Assembly (NCBI GenBank): GCA_013416795.1
Contig: RQSC01000974.1
Location: 42,854 to 106,853, forward strand
Source of the DNA: Prasinococcaceae sp. CCMP 1430
Taxonomy: Eukaryota > Plantae > Prasinodermophyta
Length of the DNA stretch: 64,000 nucleotides
Direction: 5' to 3'
Shown here: positions 4,278-18,023 of the stretch, piece by piece
How positions within the stretch are numbered: the stretch's first letter is position 1
How the letters are laid out: the number at the start of each line of letters is the position of its first letter
Notes under the pieces: generated by a model
Databases searched by the model: none
What the model saw: the letters and a program-made list of their open reading frames with translations, nothing else
What the model was told of the DNA's origin: nothing
Translations under genes and position numbers: made by a program

Positions 4278-4837
4278 CGTCGTCGCACATCCGTCCGCCG
4301 CAGCCGCCGCGCGCGCGAACGCACCAGCGGCCGCAGCAGCAGGCGCGCCTGCGCAGGCGCCCGCGCGCGACGCCGCATCGTGGCTGCGCAGGGGCGCTGC
4401 GAGCGGCGCGCTCGGTGCGCAGAGCAGGAGTGCGCGCGCGCGCACGTGCGAGGCGCGGCTGCGGCGGTGGTGGGGAGGCCGTGAGAGGGTTGGCGCGCGC
4501 GCTGTGGCGCCCCTGCACGCGCGCGCTGCTGGCGCGAGCCTGGACCCTCGATGGCCACGGGTCTGGATTTGATTGACCCGGTAGAACAGAGCGAACAGTA
4601 CTGTAATAATCACCCCAAGACCGGAATAGACCGGGTATCACTGTCGTCGTCCCGGGGGGCGCACTGCTGCGATTTTTTGAGTGGGTGACTGGGGAGGGAG
4701 GGAGGGGGGGGGGCGGCAGCGCCGCATATGGGCGTGGCTGGCGTGGTGGTTGGCGGCCGTCAGGGCGTGGCCGGAGGCGTCAGAGCGCGCGAGACGCGCG
4801 GGCGGCCCCGCGAGGGGTCGCGCAGCGCGAGTCTGGC

Positions 4838-7800
4838 ATGGCGCCGCCTGTGGCGATGTCGAGCGGCTCGAGCGCGCGCTTCTCGCGGCTCGGTAACGGC
4901 ATGACCGAGGTGGAGCTCGCTGACATGGAGGTCGGCGTCGCCCGCGGCAGCGGCGGCGGCGCTTCCGCTGCCTCTGGCGGCGCGGTGCTTCCGAGGCGCC
5001 GTAGCCCAGCTGGCACCCTCGCGCTCGGTGCGGCGCTGGCGATGGTGGCGATCGGCTTGCTCGCGTGGGTGCTCGGCGCCGGATCGCGCCCCTCAGCGGT
5101 CGATCTGCCCGCTTTCGAGTCATCTCCGCTTGATGTGCGCGAGTATGGCGCGATCGAGCTCGCCAACGGCCTACGTGTCGCGCTTGTCTCCGATCCGAGC
5201 GCGGCGCTCGCCGCAGGCGCCGTCGACGTGCACGTTGGCTCGCAGGCCGACCCGCGCAACACCAGCGGACTCGCACACTTCCTCGAGCACATGATGTTCC
5301 AAGGCTCGGAGCGCTTCCCCGGCAACGGCGCGTACATGGAGTGGCTGAGCGCGAGAGAGGGGTCTTCCAATGCATATACGGCCGGCGAGGACACTAACTA
5401 CTACTTCGAAGTCGAAGCGGCGTCGCTCGGCGGCGCCCTCTCGCGTCTGGGCTCGCAGTTCGAGGCGCCACTCCTGGCAGCCGAGGCCTCAGCGAAGGAG
5501 GTGAATGCCGTCAACAACGAGCACGTGAAGAACCTCAACTCGGACTCGTGGCGGCAGTGGATGCTCCTCAAGGCGCTGAGCGTGCCCGGCGGCGAGTGGC
5601 AGAACTTCGGCACCGGCGACGCATCGACACTCGCCGGCGCAGTAGCAGCCGTGGGCGCGGCGGATGGCGACGATGTGCTGCGGCGCTTCTTTGAGACACA
5701 CTATAGCGCTGAGCGCATGACCGCGTGCATCGCCGGGCCACAGCCGCTCGGTGAGCTGCGTGCACTCGCCGTAGAGCACTTGTCGGCCATCCCCGCGCGC
5801 CCGACGGGCGACAGCGCGAGCGATGCGCTACTTGACGCCAAGGCGGCGCGCGAGCGCGGACCCGACGTGTTCGGCCCCGCTCCGGAGGAAGACAGGAGCG
5901 GTGGCGGTGGGTTTTCCTTCGCGCCGTACGAGCTGCGGACAAGCTATCTGCCCGCGCCCAAGGTTGTATACACCAAAAGCATCTCAGACAGGAGCCTGGC
6001 GCTCGTCTGGGCGGTGCCCGGGCGCGCTGATTCGGACGCGGGCGCGCCCTTCGGCAAGCGCCACTATGACTACGACTCGCTCACCGTGCCGTTCCTGCAG
6101 AGCGTGCTCGACGCAACGCACGAAGGCTCCGCCAGCGCGGCGCTCCAGGCCGCCAACCTCGCGTATGGCGCGACATTCTCCGTCGACCAATACGACGATT
6201 GGGCGTTCTGCCAGCTCGAGGTGAGGCTCACGCCGCAGGGCGTCAGGAGACACACCGCGGTCGCGGCGACGGTGCTCGCGTACCTCGGCGCGTTTAACAA
6301 CGCCGCCGCTGAGGACCTCGCAGCCGCCTTCAGCACTTACCAGCGCGCCGCCGAGGCGCAGTGGAAGTACACCTACAACGTGAAGGAGCTCGGTACGCTC
6401 GTCTTCGACGCGAGCGAAGACATGCAGTTCGTCCCGCATCGACGCGTGCTGGGATCGCCGATGGGCGCTGAGTACAACGAGGACGTCGTGCGCGCGTACA
6501 TCTCAGCCATGAAGCCTGCAAAAGTGGTCATGTTGCTCGCCGCGCCAGACGCACTGCGTGCGGCCGCGGCCGACCTGGAGCTCAATGAGCCCATCTACGG
6601 CTCTGCGTTCTGGCAGCGCCCGCTAGCAGGGCTCCACGATGCTGAGCTGCTCCACGAGGCGTGGCAGGGGGGCAAGTATACGCTCCTAGGGAAGGAGCTG
6701 ACGATGACGCTGCCACCGCCCAACCCGTACGTCCCGAGCGACGCCGATGCATCCATCGTCGCCCCAAAGGGAAGTGATGGGACGCCCTCGCGGCTGCAGG
6801 AGTGCGCGGGGGCGGGGGCGCAGGTTGAGGCGTGCAGCAGCGATGCGGTCGTGTGGCTCGCGCCGAACGCCGCGCGTAGCACCTCGCAGCTCTTCGCGAA
6901 ATGCGTCGTGAACGCGCCGGGCCTCGCGTGGGAGGTCGCAGCGGACGGCGAACGCTTCGAGCAGGTTTCGCTGCGTCTCGACGCGGCTTTCAGCGACGTC
7001 TCCAAGGCAGTGGCGGGCCTCGCGAGCCAGGCGGGCGTTGGCGTGTCTTGGGGGCGCGCGGCCGACGGTGGTGTAGTCATCAGCGCATCGGGTGCCGCGC
7101 TCGCGGCGGAGCGCGCACTCTCTGACTACGTTGCCGCGCTGGTGTCGCACAAGCCAACGCCCGCCGACGCGCTGCGCGCGGCGCTCGGGCTGCTCTCGAG
7201 CGTCGAGACCACGCGCTCGCAGCCGCTTTTCAGGCAGTATGCGAGACTCACTGAGGAAGTGCTGCAGGAGAAGAAATGGTTGCTCGATCAGGTTGCCCTG
7301 TTCGCAACGTCGGTGAGGCACGCGGCCGAGGCGAATAACACCGAGGCGTTGTCGCATTTGCTTCCCGACATTTTCACTGGGACTCCGCAGGTGGACTGCT
7401 TCGCATATGGCAACGTCGACGAGGTGCTCGCTGCTCGCGTCAGTGCCTCGGTAGTGCAGGGCGTGTCCGCCGCAGACGATGGAGCGCAGCGCACGAAGCG
7501 GCCACAGCACCGCGGGCAGCGTGTGCTCCCCGTGGGCGACGCGTATGTGCGCCTTCCCCATCCCGCTGAGCAAATTGACGGCGCGCCACCCGACGGCAAT
7601 TCGCTGTACGTATCGTTGCACCAGTCCGACATGGCAGGGGCGCAAGGCTCACCAGAGCGCGCGATGGACAGGCTGGCGCACTCGTACCTTGTGTCGCAGG
7701 TGAGCAAGAGATTAGCTCAGCGGATACGTGCACGCATTGTGATCGCACACTGACGTTCTCTCCGCACCTCCCCATCCTATGGCCACACGCCCATAGCTCT

Positions 7801-8635: not shown

Positions 8636-9182
8636 ACACACGCGCGCACTGTGCGTGTGCCCCAGGCGGTCCGATGACCGCCGGCCTGCGCTCCCTGCAT
8701 GGTTCCATGGACGCCACGCACACCCACACATAATTCGATACATCCCCGAGCCCCCTTTGCAATCGCAATCTCACTCAGTGCCACGTGCCGCCACGGCGCC
8801 CAGGCCCACCCCGCGTGCGCGCGCCCACCCCGCGCGCGCTGCGAGGCGCGCGTTCCCGTTCCCCGTCTTGCGGCGGCGTTCCCCCGCCGGCGCGCGCGGG
8901 TGGCGGGCTCCGCTTTCGATTTGATTGGGCCGCTGCGCGGCTGCGGCGGAGGCGCGCTGGCACTCTCGATTTGATGTACATTATTGAAGGGGCACGATCC
9001 AAGGGGCACAACGGAGGATTTCGCGGTGCTTCCTCGTCCGCCGTAGCGGCGGGGGAACCGCGCGGCGCCTGGCGCGCGCGCGGCGGCAGCGGCGCCAGGC
9101 CACGCGATGCGCGCGCCCCGTGCGCGCGCCACACGCCGCACGCGGCCCGCACGCGGCCCGTACTCGGCCCACCTAGTCTGAC

Positions 9183-11465
9183 ATGGCCTCGGTACACAAG
9201 ATGGGTGAGCAGAGCCATGCAGGCCGCGGGAGCGTCGGGTGGACGCACCTTCGGACGGCCTTGCTCGCCACGCTGGCGTTTGCGCGCGCGCCGCGTGCGG
9301 CCGACGCGCACGGCATGATGGTGCTCCCGCGAACACGCAACGTCGTCGCAGCACAGGACGGCAAGTGGTGGGTGCCGCCAGGGGCGCCATCGACGCCACG
9401 CCCGGAATCCTGCCCGCACTGTCTCAACCGCGGTGGCAGCGTCGGCGCCTGTGGCGTCGTCGAGGTCAGTCGCGGCGCGGCGCGTGCAGCGTCTCCCCCT
9501 CGAAGCCGCACGCATCAGGCTGACAGCGCCTCTTTACACACATACACCGCCACCACCACCACCACCACACACTCACACGCACACTCACACGCACACTCAC
9601 CTTCGGCATCCCGCTCGCGCGGGGCACGCGTGCAGGACCGCAACTACAATGTCCCTAAGGACTCTGCTGGCGCAGTGATGCGTCCGCTGCCGATTGAAGG
9701 GGAATACGTGGAGGGCGGGCTCGTGACCGTGCGGTTCACCCTCACTGCGCACCACCGTGGTCACGTAGAGCTGAAGCTTTGCCCAGACTCTGGCGACGCC
9801 ATCTACAACGCACAGCAGGAGTGCTTTGAGGTGTGTCAGCGCACGCGCGCGTGCAAACGGATCGGGTACACTTTCGCTCGGCATGAATCCATGCGTGTGC
9901 GCGTGTGCACGTGCGTGCCCGCCAACGCACTCAGCGGCCGTGTGAGCGGGCGCCTGCACGCGCCTGAGAGATGCAAGAACAAAGTGGGGGGCGAGCCAGT
10001 GCGCCGCTGACGCATCCCTCCGCCACTTCTCACGCTCGCGCGAATTCATCAGGGGCACCACCTGGAATTCGTCCGTGACAACAAGTATGGTGCTCCGCGC
10101 GACGACAACTACCCAGTGCGCGGTTACGCCGCCCCCAATGATGGCTCCGCCCTCGACGCCAGCGCGCCAAACATGAACCTTGACGCGCCCGATGACGCTC
10201 GCAATCTTCGCGTTGGTATGGATTTCGAGATGGTCTACAAGCTGCCGGAGGTGTGTGCATGCGCTTGCGAGTGATGAAGCGCGTGTGCTCAGATGTCAAA
10301 GGAGGCGCGCGACGCTCTGTGTGTGCCGGCTGCGTGTGCTCGAGCAAGCGGGTGCTCGAGCTCGCAGCAATTGTCATCACGCGTGCGTCACCGCATGATT
10401 GCACGTGGACTGACGCTACTCCCACCCCACCCCACCCCACTCCCCCTGGGGATGGCACACTTCCATCCCTTCATGGACCGCTCCGATTGCGCGGGCCCGC
10501 CGTCCGTGACTCGACGCTCGCGCACGAACACCTAGGGTGTGAGCTGCGACCACTGCCTTCTGCAGTGGCACTACATCTCGGGCAACAGCTGCGAGGTAGA
10601 GGGCTACGACCAGGCAGGTCTACCAGCAGGCTGGCGCAACGCGCAGATTCCCGAGTGCGGGATCCTTCCCCCCGACGGCGAGGGCGCCCCAGAGCAATTC
10701 TGGAATTGCGCTGACGTGCGCATCTTGCCGAATGATGGCGGCGGTGGCGGAGACCCTCCTGCTGAGGATGACGAGGGGGGTGACGCACCCGCCGAGGAGG
10801 ACGCTGATGAAATCGACAATGGTGGAGGTGAAGCCGAGCAGCCAGGCGAGACGGAGCGGCCATCTGACGAGCCTGATGATGGCATCGATGACATGGAAGA
10901 CGGGGATGAGCAGGAGGAGCTCCCTGCAAACGGCGATGCTGGTGATGGCAACGATGGGGGCGACGAGGACAGCAGTGGCGGTGGAGACGGCGGCGACGAC
11001 CTCTGCCAACGCTCCGAGCACCACCTCGTGGCTGTGCCTGGCTCATGCGATGCCTTCATGCATTGCGTGAGTGGGCGTGTGGTGGGCGAGCCTACCTCAT
11101 GCCCGCCCGGGACCCTTTTCAACGAGCGCATGCAGTACTGCGATTGGGCTGACAACGTCAGGTACGTGCGCACATCGCACGAGCGGAACGAGAGGCAGGT
11201 CCGCTCGAAGCACGTATGCATGCGTGTGCCTGAATAAGCGCGAGAGCATGTAGGAGGCGCGCAAGTGGCCGTGCTGACGTCCCCGCGCGCGAGCAGCTGC
11301 GAGGCCGGCGGCGGCAGCGACAACGCGAACGCAAAGGGCAAGAAGAAGGCCAAGAAGGCCAAGAAGGCCAACAAGAAGGCAAAGAAGAAGGCCAAGAAGG
11401 CGAAGAGGAAGGGAAAGAAGAGCAAGAAGTCCAAGGTCGCGAGGCGTCTCCTCTGGGAGGTGTAG
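9183..11465 (+). CDS. Secreted lytic polysaccharide monooxygenase (AA15/AA10-like) + acidic linker + CBM14 chitin-binding domain + Lys-rich tail
   Basis: Exons 9183(or 9201)-9464, 9636-9830, 10053-10250, 10536-11161, 11297-11465 splice in frame. Signal peptide ends ADA|HG (His1 codon 9309). Motifs LTAHHRGHVELKLC, CLLQWHYISGNSC, EQFWNCADV. The six-Cys CBM14 is completed only across the last intron (YCDWADNV-S-C). Confidence 0.85.
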
Positions 11466-11504
11466 GGCACGGGCGGTTTGGCCACGCGTGCGCGTGCGCG
11501 CTAC

Positions 11505-11509
11505 TGTAA
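11505..11509 (+). promoter_or_regulatory. Putative green-algal TGTAA polyadenylation signal (also 47418-47422 +, 18707-18711 -, 15815-15819 -)
   Basis: TGTAA lies about 40-230 nt downstream of the stop codons of the LPMO, MA3, CFAP45 and VPS9 genes, on the correct strand in each case. Confidence 0.5.
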
Positions 11510-12219
11510 CATTGACGCGCAAACAATTTTCAACACTGCGTGTAGAGTGTTCGAGGAAGAACTTCCAGGTGGACTGATGATGAGGCAGACTCACATGATG
11601 ACTGTCACGACACACGTCATGTCCATGACGGACATCGACAGCCCTTGGAGACGGACCCTACCCTAAATTGCTTTGGAGCGAACCCGCCCATCGGCCAGCC
11701 AGGCGCCTCCTTACGCGCGGCGGGGTTCCATGGTTCCGCATCTCCTGGCGAGTGGAAGCGAAGCCCGGAATCCGTCCATCTCGGGCGGAGAGATTCGGTC
11801 GGTCGGCCGCCATCATCGAGCTGGATCCGTTTCACGTGGGTCTGCATGAACGCACGCAGCGACGACCGTTCCACGCCGGAGCGGACCACGCCCCTCCTCC
11901 CGAACGTCCATCAGGGATGGGAGCCGCGCCGCGGGGGCGACGCACGGCACAGACTGAGACCAGCTAGGAGCAAGCCGACCGACCCACGGACTCGGTCGGG
12001 CGGGCGGGCGGGCGGGCGCACCCCCTCGACTCGATCGATCGACGGCGGCCGTGCCGCGGGGCTTCCTCCGACCGATCGACGAGTGGCAAGCAAGGCTTCG
12101 GATCCACGGCGGGAGCAGCGCGCGGCGGCAGCCGGCGCTGCCCGCGGTGGTCATTTCGATGGGGGAGTGCAAAGTTTCCCAGCCGACCGACTGCGCGCGC
12201 TGCCCTCGCCGGGCGCAGT

Positions 12220-12232
12220 CAGACAGGCAGGC

Positions 12233-12287
<55 letters not shown>

Positions 12288-12293
12288 GAGAGA

Positions 12294-12348
<55 letters not shown>

Positions 12349-12349
12349 A

Positions 12350-12404
<55 letters not shown>

Positions 12405-12413
12405 GAGACAGAC

Positions 12414-12473
<60 letters not shown>

Positions 12474-12493
12474 GGACAGACAGACAGACAGAC
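12220..12493 (+). repeat. (GACA)n tetranucleotide microsatellite, about 270 bp, with a few variant units
   Basis: Directly visible tandem gaca/gaga units. Confidence 0.97.
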
Positions 12494-13699
12494 ACGACTG
12501 CAACAACGGAAAAATTTCTCCCGCCGCGTCTCGCTCGTCTTCCTCATCCACCCTGCCTCTGCCTGTCCCTGCCTGGCTGGCAACAACAGGTTTGGCCGGC
12601 CGGGCGGACGGGCGGGCCGGCCGGCCGGGGAATGTTTTTTTGTTGTTGTCTGAGTCAGACGCAACAATCGCGGCGATTGTTGCCTTTGATTGACACTGAT
12701 GCATGAGGCACCCACCGACCGCTCGCGGCGATGGTAGAACGGACAACGACCGGACCGACCGGCCAACATCCGACCGACCGTGGCAGGCTGGGGATGATTC
12801 GCGGCCCCGAATCGAGTCGGTGTCTCGCGCGCCGGCCGGGGGCGCGCGCCGACGAAGGGGGAGGAAGATCCGAAATGGGGGGGGTAAGGGGCGGTGCGAG
12901 CGAACGGGATCGCGCGCGGCACCGAAAACCCGGAAGAATTCGGGTACGGGTCGAGTCGGGTTCATTGGATCGCGCGAATCCTGGGAACCCTAACCTCAAA
13001 GCCCCTCCCCTGCGCTGGAAATGACGATGAAGCCCCTTCGACCGAGGGCTGTTGAGGCCCCTGCGGCGGCGCGTTCGGCGCGCCGCGCGTCCGCGCGCGC
13101 GAAATTCGTGCCGCGGTTTCGCGCGCCGAGTGCGAAAGCGTGTGCGAACGCGCCCCGTCATCGGCCTCTTTTCGCGAGCGAAAGCGCGCGCCCGCGCGAA
13201 CGCGCGGGGCGAAAGCGCCCCGGGAGCGGCCGGGGAACGCGCGCGGGCGAGCGGCCGCGCGCGCGCCGAAAAGGCCATACTTCGTGCGCACGTTCATCTG
13301 CATCTCCACCGAGCTCCCTCCCCGCCTGCGCCCGCGCCGTTCATGCTGCGGCGTCGCGCGCCCGCCGAAAGCGGCGGTCAAACGCGCGCGCGCGCGCCTT
13401 TCGCCGGCCGCGCCCGCGGTTCGCGAAGCGGCGTTTTTTTTTGCGGTCGTCCTCCGCGGCGGTTCGCGCCCTCGAAATTCGCCCCGACGACGCACTTTTC
13501 GACATTCAACGGATACTTTCCGTCCCGCGCACGAAGTCAAAAAACGCGGAGGCGCGGGGCGAGAGCGCAGCCCAACGGCGGTTTTCCGCGTTTCCCGACG
13601 CTCGTCGGCGCGGCTTTTTTTTTTCCCGCCGCGCCCGCGCGCACGCGCGGCGTTCGCGCGCGTTCTGACGAGCGAAACGGAATATCGCAACCAAAAGGC

Positions 13700-16049: not shown

Positions 16050-18023
16050 TCAAAGCAGTGACGGTGGTTGTGGCGAGGCCGTCGGCTGGTGAGCTGGCGC
16101 CGCCCCCAGCGTCGGTGACACCGAATCGAGCGCCCCCGCGTCAATGAGCGGAGTCAACGCAGGCACGGACGATGGCGCGATCTCCTTCGCGGCACCGCCG
16201 CCGTCGATTCCGTCGAGTGGACGTGCAGCGTGTTGGGTCACAGGTGTATTCTCCACTGCCTCCGTCAGCGATGCTGCCGGCGCATCCACTTCTATGGGCA
16301 GGGCAGGCGTCGCGGAGGAGGAGACATCGAGTGGCACCCTGTCATCGAACAGTGACATCTCGGCGGTCACAGCAGCCACAGGAGCGCCACCCTTCAGCGC
16401 CACTGCAGGAGACGCTCCCTCGACCGCCGTTGCGGCCATAGGAGCTACCGCTCGCGGAGCTGCTGCCAGGAACGGGTTCGGTACGTCTGGCGCGGGTGCT
16501 GCGGCTGCACCTTGCGAGGTCGCAGGCACGCGCGCGTCTTGCTGCGGCCCTGAATGTCCCGTTGGCGTACCGCTCGCCGCACCGGCCATGACACACGTGA
16601 CACCTCTGGCGAGGGACTCATATCGCAGCACGAGCTCCTTGTACTCGGCTAGCAGCGTGCTCACCTCCCCAATTTTCAGCTTGTGCGGTGGTGTGAACAG
16701 GAATTTGTGACGCGCCAGCTCCCCTACCGATGCCGCTTGAACCACCTCCTCGCGCCCAATCATCTCGAGTTCCTCCACGGTGAGCTGTGGTACGCTCGGC
16801 GGGGCTACCTCATGATCGTGGAGGGGTTCCCGCTGCTGCTGCTGCTGCAGCTCCTCCTCCTCCTCCTCCCCTTCCTTTCCCTGCTGCTGCTGTTGATGCT
16901 GCTGGTGCTTCTGCGATGGTGGCATATGGAGTAAGTGATCCTGCGAAGCAAGCTGCATCTGCGAGTGGGGCTGTTGCCGCGGAAGCGGCGTCGCTGCACC
17001 TGCAGCCGCAGCTGTTGCCAGCGGGCTCAGCATCGCTGTCATTGGCGAAGAGCCCTCAGTTGCTGCAATTGTGCCTGCCCTGCCCTCTGCAGTCGCCCCG
17101 TGGCTGGGAAGCTCCACGATGGGGGACAAATCGCCGTCGAGGACCGTCCCCTGGGACGCCGCTGCCGCTCTCATCTCCTTCTCAAATTCCTCCGCGCTGA
17201 TGGACAGGCTGTCTGAATTTGCTCTGTCGATGAAGGCATGCGCTGACATCAGATTGGTGAAGAAGTACGCCGCCTCCGACACCAGCCTACTCTCCTTTCG
17301 AAAGCGCTCGATGTACTTCAGGTTGGCGTAGAGCTGGGGCACGCCGGCCTTCAGCACCACGAAAATCAGCACAGGGAGGAAGTCATCCGCGCCGGGCGGC
17401 TCCCCCTCGCTCTCGGCAGCGCTCACGTTGAGAAGGTTTGTGACCACCTTGCAGCAATTCAGCATGCAAACGAGCTTGTCTCTTGGCGCCTTGAACGTGT
17501 TTATTTTCTGAAGCTCGGCTCGCGCCAGAGTCCAGCTCCGCTCGTTCCTGTACCGCGCCGGCACATCCAGGTGCTCCGGTCTCACGAACGCAGCCAGCAA
17601 AGAGCGCCGCGCGTCCGAGCGCGCGTCGGCGAGGCGCTCCTCGGGGCAGAGCGCGAAGGCGCGCGCGTGCAGCTTGGTCATGAGGTACTTCTCAAGACCC
17701 TCGCCGGCGCCATCAAGCGCGGCGTCTGATGCGCCGGCCCACAGCGGGTGCGACCGGAACGCGGCCTCAGTCGACTCGAGAAAGGACTGCACCTTGACGG
17801 CATCCATGTGCGCGTCACTTGCATCTGCCGGTGCTGTGTCGCCGCTTGGAAATGCCGCGATGAATGCCTTGATGCTGCGAACAAGCTCCGAGGCGCTAGG
17901 CTGGCGCATCTTCTCCAGAAAATCGGAGAAAGTGATAGGCGCCGTCGAAGACGCGAGTTGGTCGACGCCCCCACCAGCGGTGGCGGCAGCGCCCGCCCCG
18001 CCATCGGTTGGTGCCGATGCCAT
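16050..18023 (-). CDS. VPS9A: VPS9-domain Rab5 guanine nucleotide exchange factor (VPS9a-like), single exon
   Basis: ELQKINTFKAPRDKLVCMLNCCKVV, PPGADDFLPVLIFVV, SEAAYFFTNL; poly-Q/E low-complexity C-terminal half. Confidence 0.93.
   Translation of the reverse strand: MASAPTDGGAGAAATAGGGVDQLASSTAPITFSDFLEKMRQPSASELVRSIKAFIAAFPSGDTAPADASDAHMDAVKVQSFLESTEAAFRSHPLWAGASDAALDGAGEGLEKYLMTKLHARAFALCPEERLADARSDARRSLLAAFVRPEHLDVPARYRNERSWTLARAELQKINTFKAPRDKLVCMLNCCKVVTNLLNVSAAESEGEPPGADDFLPVLIFVVLKAGVPQLYANLKYIERFRKESRLVSEAAYFFTNLMSAHAFIDRANSDSLSISAEEFEKEMRAAAASQGTVLDGDLSPIVELPSHGATAEGRAGTIAATEGSSPMTAMLSPLATAAAAGAATPLPRQQPHSQMQLASQDHLLHMPPSQKHQQHQQQQQGKEGEEEEEELQQQQQREPLHDHEVAPPSVPQLTVEELEMIGREEVVQAASVGELARHKFLFTPPHKLKIGEVSTLLAEYKELVLRYESLARGVTCVMAGAASGTPTGHSGPQQDARVPATSQGAAAAPAPDVPNPFLAAAPRAVAPMAATAVEGASPAVALKGGAPVAAVTAEMSLFDDRVPLDVSSSATPALPIEVDAPAASLTEAVENTPVTQHAARPLDGIDGGGAAKEIAPSSVPALTPLIDAGALDSVSPTLGAAPAHQPTASPQPPSLL

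What the first reader, a model, noticed from the sequence alone, without database searches (positions are those of the whole stretch)
9183..11465. Secreted AA15-type LPMO with CBM14, acidic linker and poly-Lys tail in a green alga
Seen: five exons splice into signal peptide | His1 catalytic domain (TAHH second-His motif with the adjacent Ala; E-Q-F at the position of the axial aromatic) | D/E/G linker | six-Cys CBM14 | tail KGKKKAKKAKKANKKAKKKAKKAKRKGKKSKKSKVARRLLWEV. Known: AA15 copper LPMOs oxidise chitin/cellulose and are best known from arthropods, oomycetes and some algae; CBM14 binds chitin. Inference: a wall-remodelling or defence enzyme acting on a chitin-like polymer, tethered by a polycationic tail. 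This bipolar (acidic linker plus basic tail) architecture is not one I recognise.
Basis: partly seen in the sequence, partly recalled or inferred. Interest (0 to 1): 0.75.

Follow-up and report, generated by a model that had tools for sequence, protein, structure and literature searches.

The report
Algal chitin-cutting enzyme with charged tail
This is a real, expressed five-exon gene of a GC-rich marine green picoalga that encodes a secreted copper enzyme of the AA15 type joined to a chitin-binding module; the enzyme type is already known from algae, but the strongly acidic spacer followed by a poly-lysine tail is conserved in related picoalgae and has not been described.

Summary
The five exons are 9183-9464, 9636-9830, 10053-10250, 10536-11161 and 11297-11465, giving 489 codons. 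All four GT..AG junctions appear in marine metatranscriptome contigs. An orthologue that lacks these four introns reads straight through all four.

The catalytic domain is an AA15-type LPMO:
- Pfam LPMO_10 scores above its cut-off, with His43 at profile position 1.
- A profile of 36 relatives hits only the Thermobia AA15 structure strongly (2.7e-20; AA10 at E about 0.5-1).
- A 52%-identical relative folds as an LPMO, and its best match is AA15.

The second brace His lies in TAHH, and the axial residue is Phe, as in chitin-active AA15s. CBM14 is clear (6e-12); its sixth Cys is supplied by exon 5.

AA15 in Chlorophyta and AA15-CBM14 fusions were already reported in 2018. What is new is a 90-residue spacer (net -37) followed by a 38-residue basic run (net +25). 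This layout is conserved in composition in an orthologue (P0194) and in a GC-0.50 relative (P0085). Basic C-terminal tails also recur elsewhere in the family.

An electrostatic tether is my preferred reading, but it is an inference. The substrate and the cellular location are untested. The scan also noted this stretch in another window.

The parts
9098..9182 (+). 5' untranslated region, minimum extent; an in-frame stop (TAG 9174-9176) lies just upstream of the first ATG
   Evidence: RNA contigs begin at 9098 (X1) and 9160 (X4); sequence
9183..9308 (+). Signal-peptide-like leader of 42 codons, ending A-D-A (small residues at -3 and -1)
   Evidence: In 44 relatives the leader before the aligned His has G/A/S at -1 in 43 and V/A/T/G/S/I at -3 in 43. 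The window's maximum 9-residue hydropathy is 2.3, against a family median of 2.67
9309..9464 (+). Start of the mature LPMO domain in exon 1. His43 (CAC 9309-9311) is His1 of the histidine brace, followed by the HGMMVLPRTRN and CPHCLNRGG motifs
   Evidence: The Pfam LPMO_10 alignment starts at residue 43 = profile position 1. hhalign to family profile columns 10-76, E 4.5e-27
9465..9635 (+). Intron 1 (171 nt, GT..AG). It is in frame and free of stops, and contains CAC/CACACT microsatellites
   Evidence: Joint 9462>9634 (cut +2) in runs X4 and X9. The orthologue reads IVEDRNY contiguously. Tandem repeats
9636..9830 (+). Exon 2: LPMO core with TAHHRGH. The second brace His is CAC 9753-9755, with Ala at -2
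   Evidence: hhalign columns 78-139, E 6.9e-21. Aligned to the A-P-H of TdAA15A (5msz)
9831..10052 (+). Intron 2 (222 nt, GT..AG)
   Evidence: Joint in all four runs; absent from orthologue P0194
10053..10250 (+). Exon 3: LPMO loop and strand region (LEFVRDNKYGAPRDDNYPVRGY ... FEMVYKLPE)
   Evidence: hhalign columns 141-193, E 2.2e-13
10251..10535 (+). Intron 3 (285 nt, GT..AG)
   Evidence: Joint in all four runs; absent from P0194
10536..10730 (+). Exon 4, first part: C-terminal strands of the LPMO, with LLQWHY and PEQFWNCAD. The axial Phe is TTC 10698-10700, with Glu at -2
   Evidence: hhalign columns 194-264, E 4e-25. Phe aligns with the axial Tyr of TdAA15A
10731..11000 (+). Polyanionic D/E/G linker: 90 residues, net charge -37, no Lys
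   Evidence: Acidic linkers sit at the same place in P0194 (net -15) and P0085 (net -24)
11004..11161 (+). CBM14 (peritrophin-A) chitin-binding module, Cys 1-5
   Evidence: Pfam PF01607, 6.2e-12, 45.9 bits against a cut-off of 22.1. PDB sequence hits to a chitin-binding beak protein and to chitinase CBM14
11162..11296 (+). Intron 4 (135 nt, GT..AG), splitting a Ser codon
   Evidence: Joint 11158>11294 (cut +3) in X1 and X4. P0194 reads NLVNCDAG contiguously. One unspliced contig was also seen (X4 record 14)
11297..11333 (+). Start of exon 5: the sixth Cys of CBM14 (TGC 11298-11300) and a short G/S/N spacer
   Evidence: The Cys is conserved in P0194 and P0085
11334..11447 (+). Polybasic run of 38 residues (22 K, 3 R, no D/E; net +25), encoded by an imperfect (AAGAAGGCC)n repeat
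   Evidence: Equivalent K runs occur in P0194 (net +18) and P0085 (net +13). It is the only such run in the 64-kb window
11448..11465 (+). C-terminal LLWEV and stop. With the preceding RR it forms RRLL, which is also present in the orthologue (RRLLMGGDE)

Best explanation
The gene encodes a secreted, copper-dependent lytic polysaccharide monooxygenase (LPMO) of the AA15 type.

Mechanism, with the status of each step:
- Shown by sequence: signal-peptidase cleavage after A-D-A would expose His43 as residue 1. Its amino group and imidazole, together with the second His of TAHH, form the histidine brace for Cu. Phe of E-Q-F sits at the axial position and Ala at the apical side.
- Inferred from family knowledge: with a reductant and O2 or H2O2, the enzyme oxidatively nicks crystalline chitin chains.
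- Shown: the CBM14 module is present. Inferred: it holds the enzyme on chitin.
- Inferred only: the 90-residue polyanionic spacer keeps the two modules apart and extended. The C-terminal poly-Lys run binds a polyanionic surface, most likely the alga's own anionic surface coat or exopolymer. The enzyme would then stay at the cell instead of diffusing into seawater, and could bridge cell and chitin.

Confidence by layer: LPMO of AA15 type about 0.9; chitin as substrate about 0.7; tail as electrostatic tether about 0.4.
For: Gene model:
- RNA contigs carry all four junctions.
- The orthologue reads contiguously across all four junctions.

LPMO identity:
- Pfam LPMO_10 scores 26.2 bits against a cut-off of 23 on the contiguous ORF 9183-10007, starting at His43 = profile position 1.
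- The exhaustive HMMER search found 236 relatives at E<=1e-3.
- 48 of 50 relatives are LPMO_10.
- Exons 1-4 cover the family profile without a gap.

AA15 rather than AA10:
- The family profile hits 5msz (TdAA15A) at 8e-19 and 2.7e-20, from His1 to the C-terminal strand. AA10 chains score only E 0.5-1.
- An AlphaFold model of a 52%-identical member (pLDDT 90.9) has 5msz as its best Foldseek hit (5e-9), and the other matches at E<=0.001 are all LPMOs.

Chitin:
- CBM14 at 6.2e-12.
- The partner modules across the family are all chitin modules.
- Axial Phe is typical of chitin-active AA15s (PMC9156745, PMC8393829).

Tail under selection:
- P0194 keeps acidic linker, CBM14, acidic patch, poly-K and RRLL, although the repeat sequence is different.
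- P0085 keeps acidic linker, CBM14, acidic stretch and a K-run.
- P0060, P0030 (Thalassiosira punctigera), P0036 and P0032 end in basic tails.
Against: - No activity, copper-binding or localisation data exist for this protein or for any algal AA15.
- The window's own catalytic domain was neither folded nor scanned as one piece. Single exons give only weak hits (E 0.013-0.12).
- The leader is long (42 residues) with a short hydrophobic core, and no signal-peptide predictor was run.
- Seawater ionic strength weakens electrostatic binding.
- The polyanionic partner of the tail is unknown.
- No chitin synthase or chitinase has been noted in this genome by the scan, so the source of substrate is open.
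- The acidic spacer could instead neutralise the tail within the same molecule.
- None of the 50 metagenome and metatranscriptome relatives carries such a tail.
Confidence: 0.6

Rival explanations
1. The C-terminus is a sorting or processing signal rather than a tether. The dibasic RR followed by a short hydrophobic/acidic end (LLWEV) would act as a kexin-type cleavage site, or as a C-terminal vacuolar or lysosomal sorting determinant. The LPMO would then work inside an endomembrane compartment, or be released after trimming.
For: - RRLL is conserved between the window and orthologue P0194.
- An RR-x-L-(R)-G-like motif lies in the last 30 residues of 8 of 68 long family members. It occurs in 0.4% of internal windows, and about 1 of 68 is expected from shuffled tails.
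- From my own knowledge: plant class I chitinases carry short C-terminal vacuolar propeptides.
Against: - The regex was defined after seeing examples, so the enrichment is inflated.
- The motif is short.
- This reading does not explain a conserved run of 20-25 Lys or the acidic spacer.
- No hydrophobic anchor or known sorting consensus is matched.
Confidence: 0.15
2. It is a defence weapon against chitin-walled parasites (chytrids and other fungi-like organisms) or chitinous grazers. CBM14 would target the foreign wall, the LPMO would weaken it, and the polycation would bind or disturb anionic walls and membranes.
For: - The family's partner modules are all chitin modules.
- The scan has noted no chitin synthase in this genome (weak evidence).
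- Several LPMO-like paralogues are noted in the same genome, as expected for an expanded extracellular arsenal.
- AA15s act as chitin-specific virulence factors in an oomycete (PMC8393829), which shows AA15s being used against another organism's chitin.
Against: - No expression data link it to infection.
- The transcripts were recovered from ordinary marine metatranscriptomes of several studies.
- Polycation toxicity is pure conjecture.
Confidence: 0.1
3. The enzyme remodels a chitin-like polymer made by the alga itself, for example in a resting or zygote wall or at division. The charged regions would organise it in that matrix.
For:
- Insect AA15s remodel endogenous chitin (PMC9156745).
- Relatives occur in diatoms (P0030, Thalassiosira punctigera). 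From my own knowledge, Thalassiosira makes chitin fibres and K-rich clusters target diatom proteins to silica.
Against: - No chitin synthase note exists for this genome.
- Micromonas and Ostreococcus, the naked Mamiellales genera, are wall-less (PMC3491373), although this organism's identity is not established.
Confidence: 0.1
4. The acidic linker and poly-Lys tail are neutral low-complexity DNA produced by repeat slippage and have no function. The protein works as a plain AA15-CBM14.
For: - The tail is encoded by an imperfect (AAGAAGGCC)n tandem repeat.
- Natural populations may carry an in-frame AAG insertion at 11351.
- Published LPMO tails are mostly weakly charged and variable (PMC8615602).
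Against: - The same order of charge blocks is kept in P0194 and P0085, with different repeat units and codons.
- The linker has no Lys at all and the tail core has no acidic residue.
- It is the only poly-K run in 64 kb.
Confidence: 0.05

Closest known systems
CAZy family AA15 LPMOs (founding member Thermobia domestica TdAA15A, PDB 5msz; Sabbadin et al. 2018, PMC5823890)
   Same: - N-terminal His, the A-x-H second His, and the E-x-[Y/F]-x-N-C-A-D C-terminal strand.
- It is the best and only strong solved-structure match by profile (2.7e-20) and by fold.
- The 2018 paper already lists Chlorophyta among AA15 holders and mentions CBM14 fusions.
   Different: - About 23% identity.
- The algal clade is about 40 residues longer, with extra loops (the CPHCLNRGG and YGAP-D-NYP-RGY regions) and extra Cys.
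- The axial residue is Phe rather than Tyr.
- A clade-specific His cluster HH-x-G-H surrounds the second brace His.
- TdAA15A is a bare catalytic domain.
Chitin-active AA15s with axial Phe: insect LPMO15-1 (PMC9156745) and Aphanomyces astaci AaAA15A (PMC8393829)
   Same: Axial Phe; a chitin context; secreted; the insect group I enzymes carry a C-terminal Cys-rich chitin-binding-type region.
   Different: The insect Cys repeats are stated not to be CBM14. No polyelectrolyte linker or tail is described. The biology differs: cuticle turnover and host invasion.
Disordered C-terminal regions of LPMOs (Tamburrini et al. 2021, PMC8615602)
   Same: A low-complexity, probably disordered extension after the catalytic module. 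AA15 extensions often alternate ordered and disordered segments.
   Different: The survey describes these regions as weak, neutral polyampholytes: fraction of charged residues below 0.25 in 75% of sequences, mean net charge 0, and enrichment in S/T/P/A. Here there are two strong polyelectrolyte blocks of opposite sign (charged fraction 0.43 with net -37; charged fraction 0.66 with net +25) on either side of a CBM14.
Vibrio cholerae GbpA (AA10 colonisation factor, PDB 2xwx). This is an analogy of working principle only; domain roles are from my own knowledge.
   Same: An LPMO plus a chitin-binding module in one secreted protein, in which another part binds the producer's own cell surface, so the protein bridges cell and chitin. 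2xwx appears among the fold hits (rank 21).
   Different: It belongs to a different LPMO family (AA10). Its cell-binding part is made of folded domains, not a poly-Lys run. It is bacterial. Cell-surface binding of the algal tail is untested.
Lysine clusters that target diatom silaffin-type proteins to the cell covering (from my own knowledge; not checked in a paper here)
   Same: Short K-rich blocks in secreted proteins that bind an anionic extracellular material. A diatom member of this LPMO family (P0030, Thalassiosira punctigera) ends in a K/R/P-rich tail.
   Different: The present organism is a green alga without silica. Its tail is a continuous K/A run of about 38 residues.

Membership tests
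CAZy AA15 / Pfam LPMO_10 (PF03067) | Histidine as the first residue of the mature protein (His1 of the copper histidine brace), directly after a signal peptide | tested here: met
   The Pfam alignment starts at His43 = profile position 1. The leader ends A-D-A. In 44 relatives, 43 have G/A/S at -1. Cleavage itself was not predicted with a dedicated tool and has not been measured.
CAZy AA15 / Pfam LPMO_10 (PF03067) | Second brace histidine in an A-x-H context on the central sheet | tested here: met
   In TAHH, the second His is invariant in 36 relatives (H101 in A2) and aligns with the A-P-H of TdAA15A.
CAZy AA15 / Pfam LPMO_10 (PF03067) | Axial aromatic residue (Tyr or Phe) in the last strand, in the motif E-x-[YF]-x-N-C-A | tested here: met
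   PEQFWNCAD aligns with EEYRNCAD of 5msz. The residue is Phe, as in insect and oomycete chitin-active AA15s (PMC9156745, PMC8393829).
CAZy AA15 / Pfam LPMO_10 (PF03067) | Sequence similarity above the family threshold, and closer to AA15 than to other LPMO families | tested here: met
   LPMO_10 scores 26.2 bits against a cut-off of 23 on ORF 9183-10007. The profile of relatives hits 5msz at 2.7e-20, with AA10 at E 0.5-1 and AA13 at 0.003. Single exons alone are sub-threshold. dbCAN was not available, and the joined protein was not scanned.
CAZy AA15 / Pfam LPMO_10 (PF03067) | LPMO immunoglobulin-like beta-sandwich fold with a flat copper face | tested here: inconclusive
   Met for a 52%-identical relative (P0012:24-264; pLDDT 90.9; best Foldseek hit 5msz at 5e-9). 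Brace geometry was not measured.
CAZy AA15 / Pfam LPMO_10 (PF03067) | Copper binding and oxidative cleavage of chitin or cellulose | not testable with these tools
   This needs a recombinant enzyme assay.
CBM14 (Pfam PF01607, peritrophin-A) | Profile score above the curated cut-off | tested here: met
   45.9 bits against 22.1, E 6.2e-12, profile positions 1-49 of 53.
CBM14 (Pfam PF01607, peritrophin-A) | Six conserved cysteines (three disulfides) | tested here: met
   Five Cys are in exon 4. The sixth (TGC 11298-11300) appears only in the spliced frame. The same C-x-W-x(3-4)-V-x-C ending is seen in P0194 and P0085.
CBM14 (Pfam PF01607, peritrophin-A) | Binding to chitin | not testable with these tools
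   This needs a pull-down on chitin beads.
GbpA-like bridging adhesin (functional class, not a sequence family) | A part of the protein binds the producer's own cell surface | not testable with these tools
   The only basis is an inference from the conserved polybasic run.

The most novel reading that the evidence does not exclude
Wall-less or scale-bearing marine green picoalgae may display a chitin-oxidising LPMO on their own surface through a conserved 'polyanion spacer, CBM14, polycation' cassette. The poly-Lys end would stick to the anionic cell coat, while the CBM14 and LPMO reach out to chitin. Tiny phototrophs would then have a way to attach to and mine chitin particles (for nitrogen or carbon) or to attack chitin-walled parasites. 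This would be a eukaryotic, disorder-based counterpart of bacterial GbpA. The recurrent C-terminal RR-x-L motif might be a shared export or processing signal for such surface proteins across algal lineages.
Probability: 0.25. Interest if true: 0.65.

Novelty: new variant of a known kind. Interest (0 to 1): 0.42.

Why it matters
LPMOs of family AA15 are known from arthropods, oomycetes and algae, but no algal member has been characterised, and the role of chitin-active enzymes in phototrophic picoplankton is unknown. This gene is transcribed in the sea: spliced contigs were recovered in all four metatranscriptome runs laid, from four separate studies. It belongs to a family of more than 200 detectable relatives in marine protists, almost always paired with chitin modules. 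If the conserved charged cassette holds the enzyme at the cell surface, that would point to particle attachment or chitin use by picoeukaryotic algae. It would also offer a simple, transferable polyelectrolyte tether for enzyme display. If not, the gene is one more AA15-CBM14 enzyme with a decorative tail.

Tried and rejected
- Single-exon searches against Pfam and PDB gave only weak LPMO hits (E 0.013-0.12). Exon 3 alone found nothing in PDB. The question was resolved with the contiguous stop-free ORF 9183-10007 and with family profiles.
- The scan of viral contigs with the family alignment found no relative, so there is no sign of a giant-virus copy in IMG/VR.
- The metagenome scan with exon 4 returned 50 loci. 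All match only the LPMO C-terminal strand (at most 52% identity), and none has a poly-K tail, so it yielded no orthologue. The word-index protein search then found the orthologue P0194.
- Synteny: the neighbours of the orthologous and related loci (L054: Casc1_N; L052: PEPcase, TFIID-31kDa, PAE, DUF2358) have no counterpart in the window. The window's neighbours are an M16 peptidase and a VPS9 protein. I therefore reject a conserved 'three-gene surface module'.
- AA10 membership was considered and rejected: AA10 chains reach only E 0.5-1 against the profile.
- L051/P0002, the nearest 50%-cluster representative, is a paralogue-type gene with a P/T linker and a different Cys-rich C-terminal domain. 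It is not the same architecture.
- Organism identity was not established, because names are masked. It is a GC-rich (0.62-0.74) marine green picoalga, judged from the runs that hold the sequence.
- Literature searches found no paper linking AA15 with Micromonas, Ostreococcus or Bathycoccus and none on Lys-rich LPMO tails.
Full report
**1. Observation**

Reading 8900-11800 and translating the proposed exons gives five exons on the + strand:

| Exon | Coordinates | Note |
|---|---|---|
| 1 | 9183-9464 | starts at the first ATG after an in-frame stop |
| 2 | 9636-9830 | |
| 3 | 10053-10250 | |
| 4 | 10536-11161 | ends with two bases of a split Ser codon |
| 5 | 11297-11465 | stop TAG at 11463-11465 |

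- The coding sequence is 1470 nt, or 489 codons plus stop. The introns are GT..AG and 171, 222, 285 and 135 nt long.
- The stretch is held by marine metatranscriptomes of several studies, at about half of its sampled words, as expected for exons only.
- Laying contigs of four such runs gave joints at all four predicted introns, with GT..AG ends. X4 record 13 runs through exons 1-4, and X1 record 3 runs through exons 3-5.
- A few unspliced contigs also exist, covering introns 1, 2 and 4. They may be pre-mRNA or DNA.
- An orthologous locus from an ENA marine metagenome (L054, GC 0.71) reads contiguously across all four junctions (IVEDRNY, ECFDANRLEFVRD, FKLPEGINCDHC, NLVNCDAG). It has introns at two other places instead.

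The gene model is therefore confirmed twice over, by RNA and by comparison.

**2. The catalytic domain**

Exon by exon, the hits are weak:
- Pfam gives LPMO_10 on exon 2 (E 0.013, profile 85-118) and on exon 4 (E 0.025, profile 158-183).
- PDB gives TdAA15A as the best hit for exon 2 (E 0.12).

Intron 1 is in frame and free of stops, so 9183-10007 is a contiguous ORF that can be given by reference. It scores 26.2 bits on LPMO_10 (cut-off 23), with His43 aligned to profile position 1.

The exhaustive HMMER search with that ORF found 236 proteins at E<=1e-3, of which 76 are at E<=1e-10. Of 50 relatives, 48 are LPMO_10 members. Their partner modules are CBM18 (8), CBM14 (5), GH18 (4) and CBM5/12 (1), all chitin-related.

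The window's exons 1-4 align to the family profile at columns 10-76, 78-139, 141-193 and 194-264, with E-values of 4.5e-27, 6.9e-21, 2.2e-13 and 4e-25. The spliced product is therefore a complete domain with nothing missing.

**3. AA15 or AA10?**

- Family profiles hit only Thermobia AA15 (5msz) strongly: 8.1e-19 and 2.7e-20, aligned from His1 to the last strand.
- AA13 scores 0.003, and AA10 chains score E 0.5-1.
- An AlphaFold model of P0012:24-264 (52% identical to the window in the matched stretches; pLDDT 90.9, pTM 0.91) finds 5msz first by Foldseek (5e-9), followed by AA13 and many AA10 structures.
- Key residues: His43; Ala-His-His, with the second His aligned to His91 of TdAA15A; and Glu-Gln-Phe aligned to Glu-Glu-Tyr184.
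- Axial Phe is what insect LPMO15-1 and Aphanomyces AaAA15A carry (PMC9156745, PMC8393829).
- The clade also has nearly invariant extra histidines, in the pattern HH-x-G-H.

**4. Secretion**

- The 42-residue leader ends A-D-A before His43.
- In 44 relatives, the residue at -1 is G/A/S in 43 and the residue at -3 is a small or aliphatic residue in 43. Leader hydropathy is comparable to the window's.
- The orthologue has ...GAATGAEA|HGMMTEPRTRN.
- No dedicated signal-peptide predictor was available.

**5. CBM14, linker and tail**

- CBM14 is unambiguous: PF01607, 6.2e-12, with PDB sequence hits to chitin-binding proteins.
- Its sixth Cys lies in exon 5 and exists only in the spliced frame.
- The linker is 90 residues with 23 D, 15 E, 23 G and no Lys (net -37).
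- The tail core is 38 residues with 22 K, 3 R and no acidic residue (net +25). It is followed by LLWEV.
- The tail is encoded by an imperfect (AAGAAGGCC)n repeat. It is the only poly-K run in any frame of the 64-kb window.

**6. Is the charged architecture conserved?**

| Protein | Source | Layout |
|---|---|---|
| P0194 | orthologue; 46% identity over the exon 4 region, about 75% in the catalytic part and about 62% in CBM14 | LPMO, acidic E/P linker (net -15), CBM14, acidic patch (net -7), K7-D-K10-D-KK ... AGRRLLMGGDE (net +18) |
| P0085 | 528 aa, intronless, on GC-0.50 eukaryotic contigs from TARA metagenomes | LPMO, acidic N/Q/D/E linker (net -24), CBM14, acidic stretch (net -11), KNRGKKNKKNKKGKKNKKNK, second CBM14 |

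- Elsewhere in the family, P0060, P0030 (Thalassiosira punctigera by its MMETSP/EukProt name), P0036 and P0032 end in K/R-rich tails. P0032 and P0150 also have an acidic block before the basic end.
- None of 50 other metagenome and metatranscriptome relatives has such a tail.
- The survey of LPMO C-terminal regions describes them as weak, neutral polyampholytes, with a charged fraction below 0.25 in 75% of sequences (PMC8615602). These blocks are outliers by that standard.

**7. Mechanism**

What the sequence shows is a complete AA15-type active site behind a cleavable leader, a genuine CBM14, and conserved opposite-charge blocks.

What I infer:
- Copper-dependent oxidative cleavage of chitin.
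- The polyanionic spacer acts as an extended, self-repelling stalk.
- The poly-Lys end binds a polyanionic surface.

For scale-bearing relatives, such a surface is plausible: scales of a related chlorophyte (Scherffelia) are acidic polysaccharides (discussed in PMC3491373). Micromonas and Ostreococcus are naked, and the coat chemistry of this organism is unknown.

The rival readings are a C-terminal sorting or processing signal, defence, self-remodelling, and neutral low complexity. They are listed with their odds in the Rival explanations section.

**8. Context**

- The upstream gene is an M16 peptidase (4685-7753, +). Downstream are an unassigned acidic ORF and a VPS9-domain gene (16050-18023, -).
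- The related loci L054 and L052 have unrelated neighbours, so there is no conserved gene cluster.
- Earlier notes of this scan report further LPMO-like genes in the same genome, including an AA15 with a CBM2-like tail. I did not test those.
- The scan also noted this same stretch in another window.

**9. Novelty**

AA15 in Chlorophyta, and AA15 fused to CBM14, were reported in 2018 (PMC5823890), so the enzyme itself is a new member of a known family. The conserved bipolar polyelectrolyte cassette has not been described in the papers I could search. I rate it a new variant of a known kind, of moderate interest.

Noticed in passing
window 11442-11462; P0194, P0010, P0023, P0028, P0043, P0134, P0136; L043, L046 and L047 C-termini: A short RR-x-L-(R)-G-like motif recurs within the last 30 residues of family members from different lineages: RRLLWEV here, then RRLLMGGDE, RRHLRGG, RRNLRG, RRGLLRGG and RRGLRRLLDN. 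It occurs in 8 of 68 long proteins, against 0.4% of internal windows and about 1 of 68 for shuffled tails. The pattern was defined after seeing examples. It could be a processing or sorting signal.
   Followed up: partly
L021, L023, L025, L030, L034, L037, L042, L044, L045 (C-termini): Another subclade of these LPMO relatives, seen in marine metatranscriptome contigs, ends in ...DEL, ...EEL or ...VEL. These look like ER-retention signals, which is odd for an enzyme expected to act outside the cell.
   Followed up: no
window introns at 9465-9635, 9831-10052, 10251-10535 and 11162-11296, compared with L054 3182-4981: Intron positions differ completely between the window and its orthologue. All four window introns are absent from L054, which instead has one intron after VVAAQ and one inside the exon 2 equivalent. 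This indicates rapid intron gain or loss in these GC-rich picoalgae.
   Followed up: partly
window 9465-9635 (intron 1); P0001 cluster: Intron 1 is in frame and free of stops, so prokaryote-style gene callers have deposited a false 275-residue protein (exon 1 + intron + exon 2 + part of intron 2). The cluster has 28 members of 74-277 residues; the near-full-length ones are 269-277. That length variation probably lies in the CAC/CACACT microsatellites of the intron.
   Followed up: partly
window 9750-9767 (TAHHRGH); alignment A2 positions 100, 101, 104: In the algal and protist clade, two further histidines flank the second brace His in the pattern HH-x-G-H and are more than 90% conserved. TdAA15A lacks them. 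They could be second-sphere residues or an extra metal site.
   Followed up: no
window 11351: Contigs in three of the four runs carry an in-frame AAG (Lys) insertion in the poly-K repeat. Many unrelated K/A-rich transcripts also pile up on 11325-11421, so the insertion may not belong to this gene.
   Followed up: no
window 12216-12494: There is a long (CAGA)n microsatellite of about 69 copies in the intergenic region downstream of the gene. It creates a spurious TDRQ-repeat ORF.
   Followed up: no
window 4685-7753 (+) and 16050-18023 (-): The neighbouring genes are an M16 (insulinase-type) peptidase with all three M16 domains and a VPS9-domain protein. They are not conserved next to the related LPMO loci L054 and L052.
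   Followed up: partly
L051 1142-1779: A paralogue-type LPMO in another GC-rich (0.65) marine contig carries a P/T-rich linker and a different Cys-rich C-terminal domain (VCGETDPKQNGGQC...), which I did not identify.
   Followed up: no
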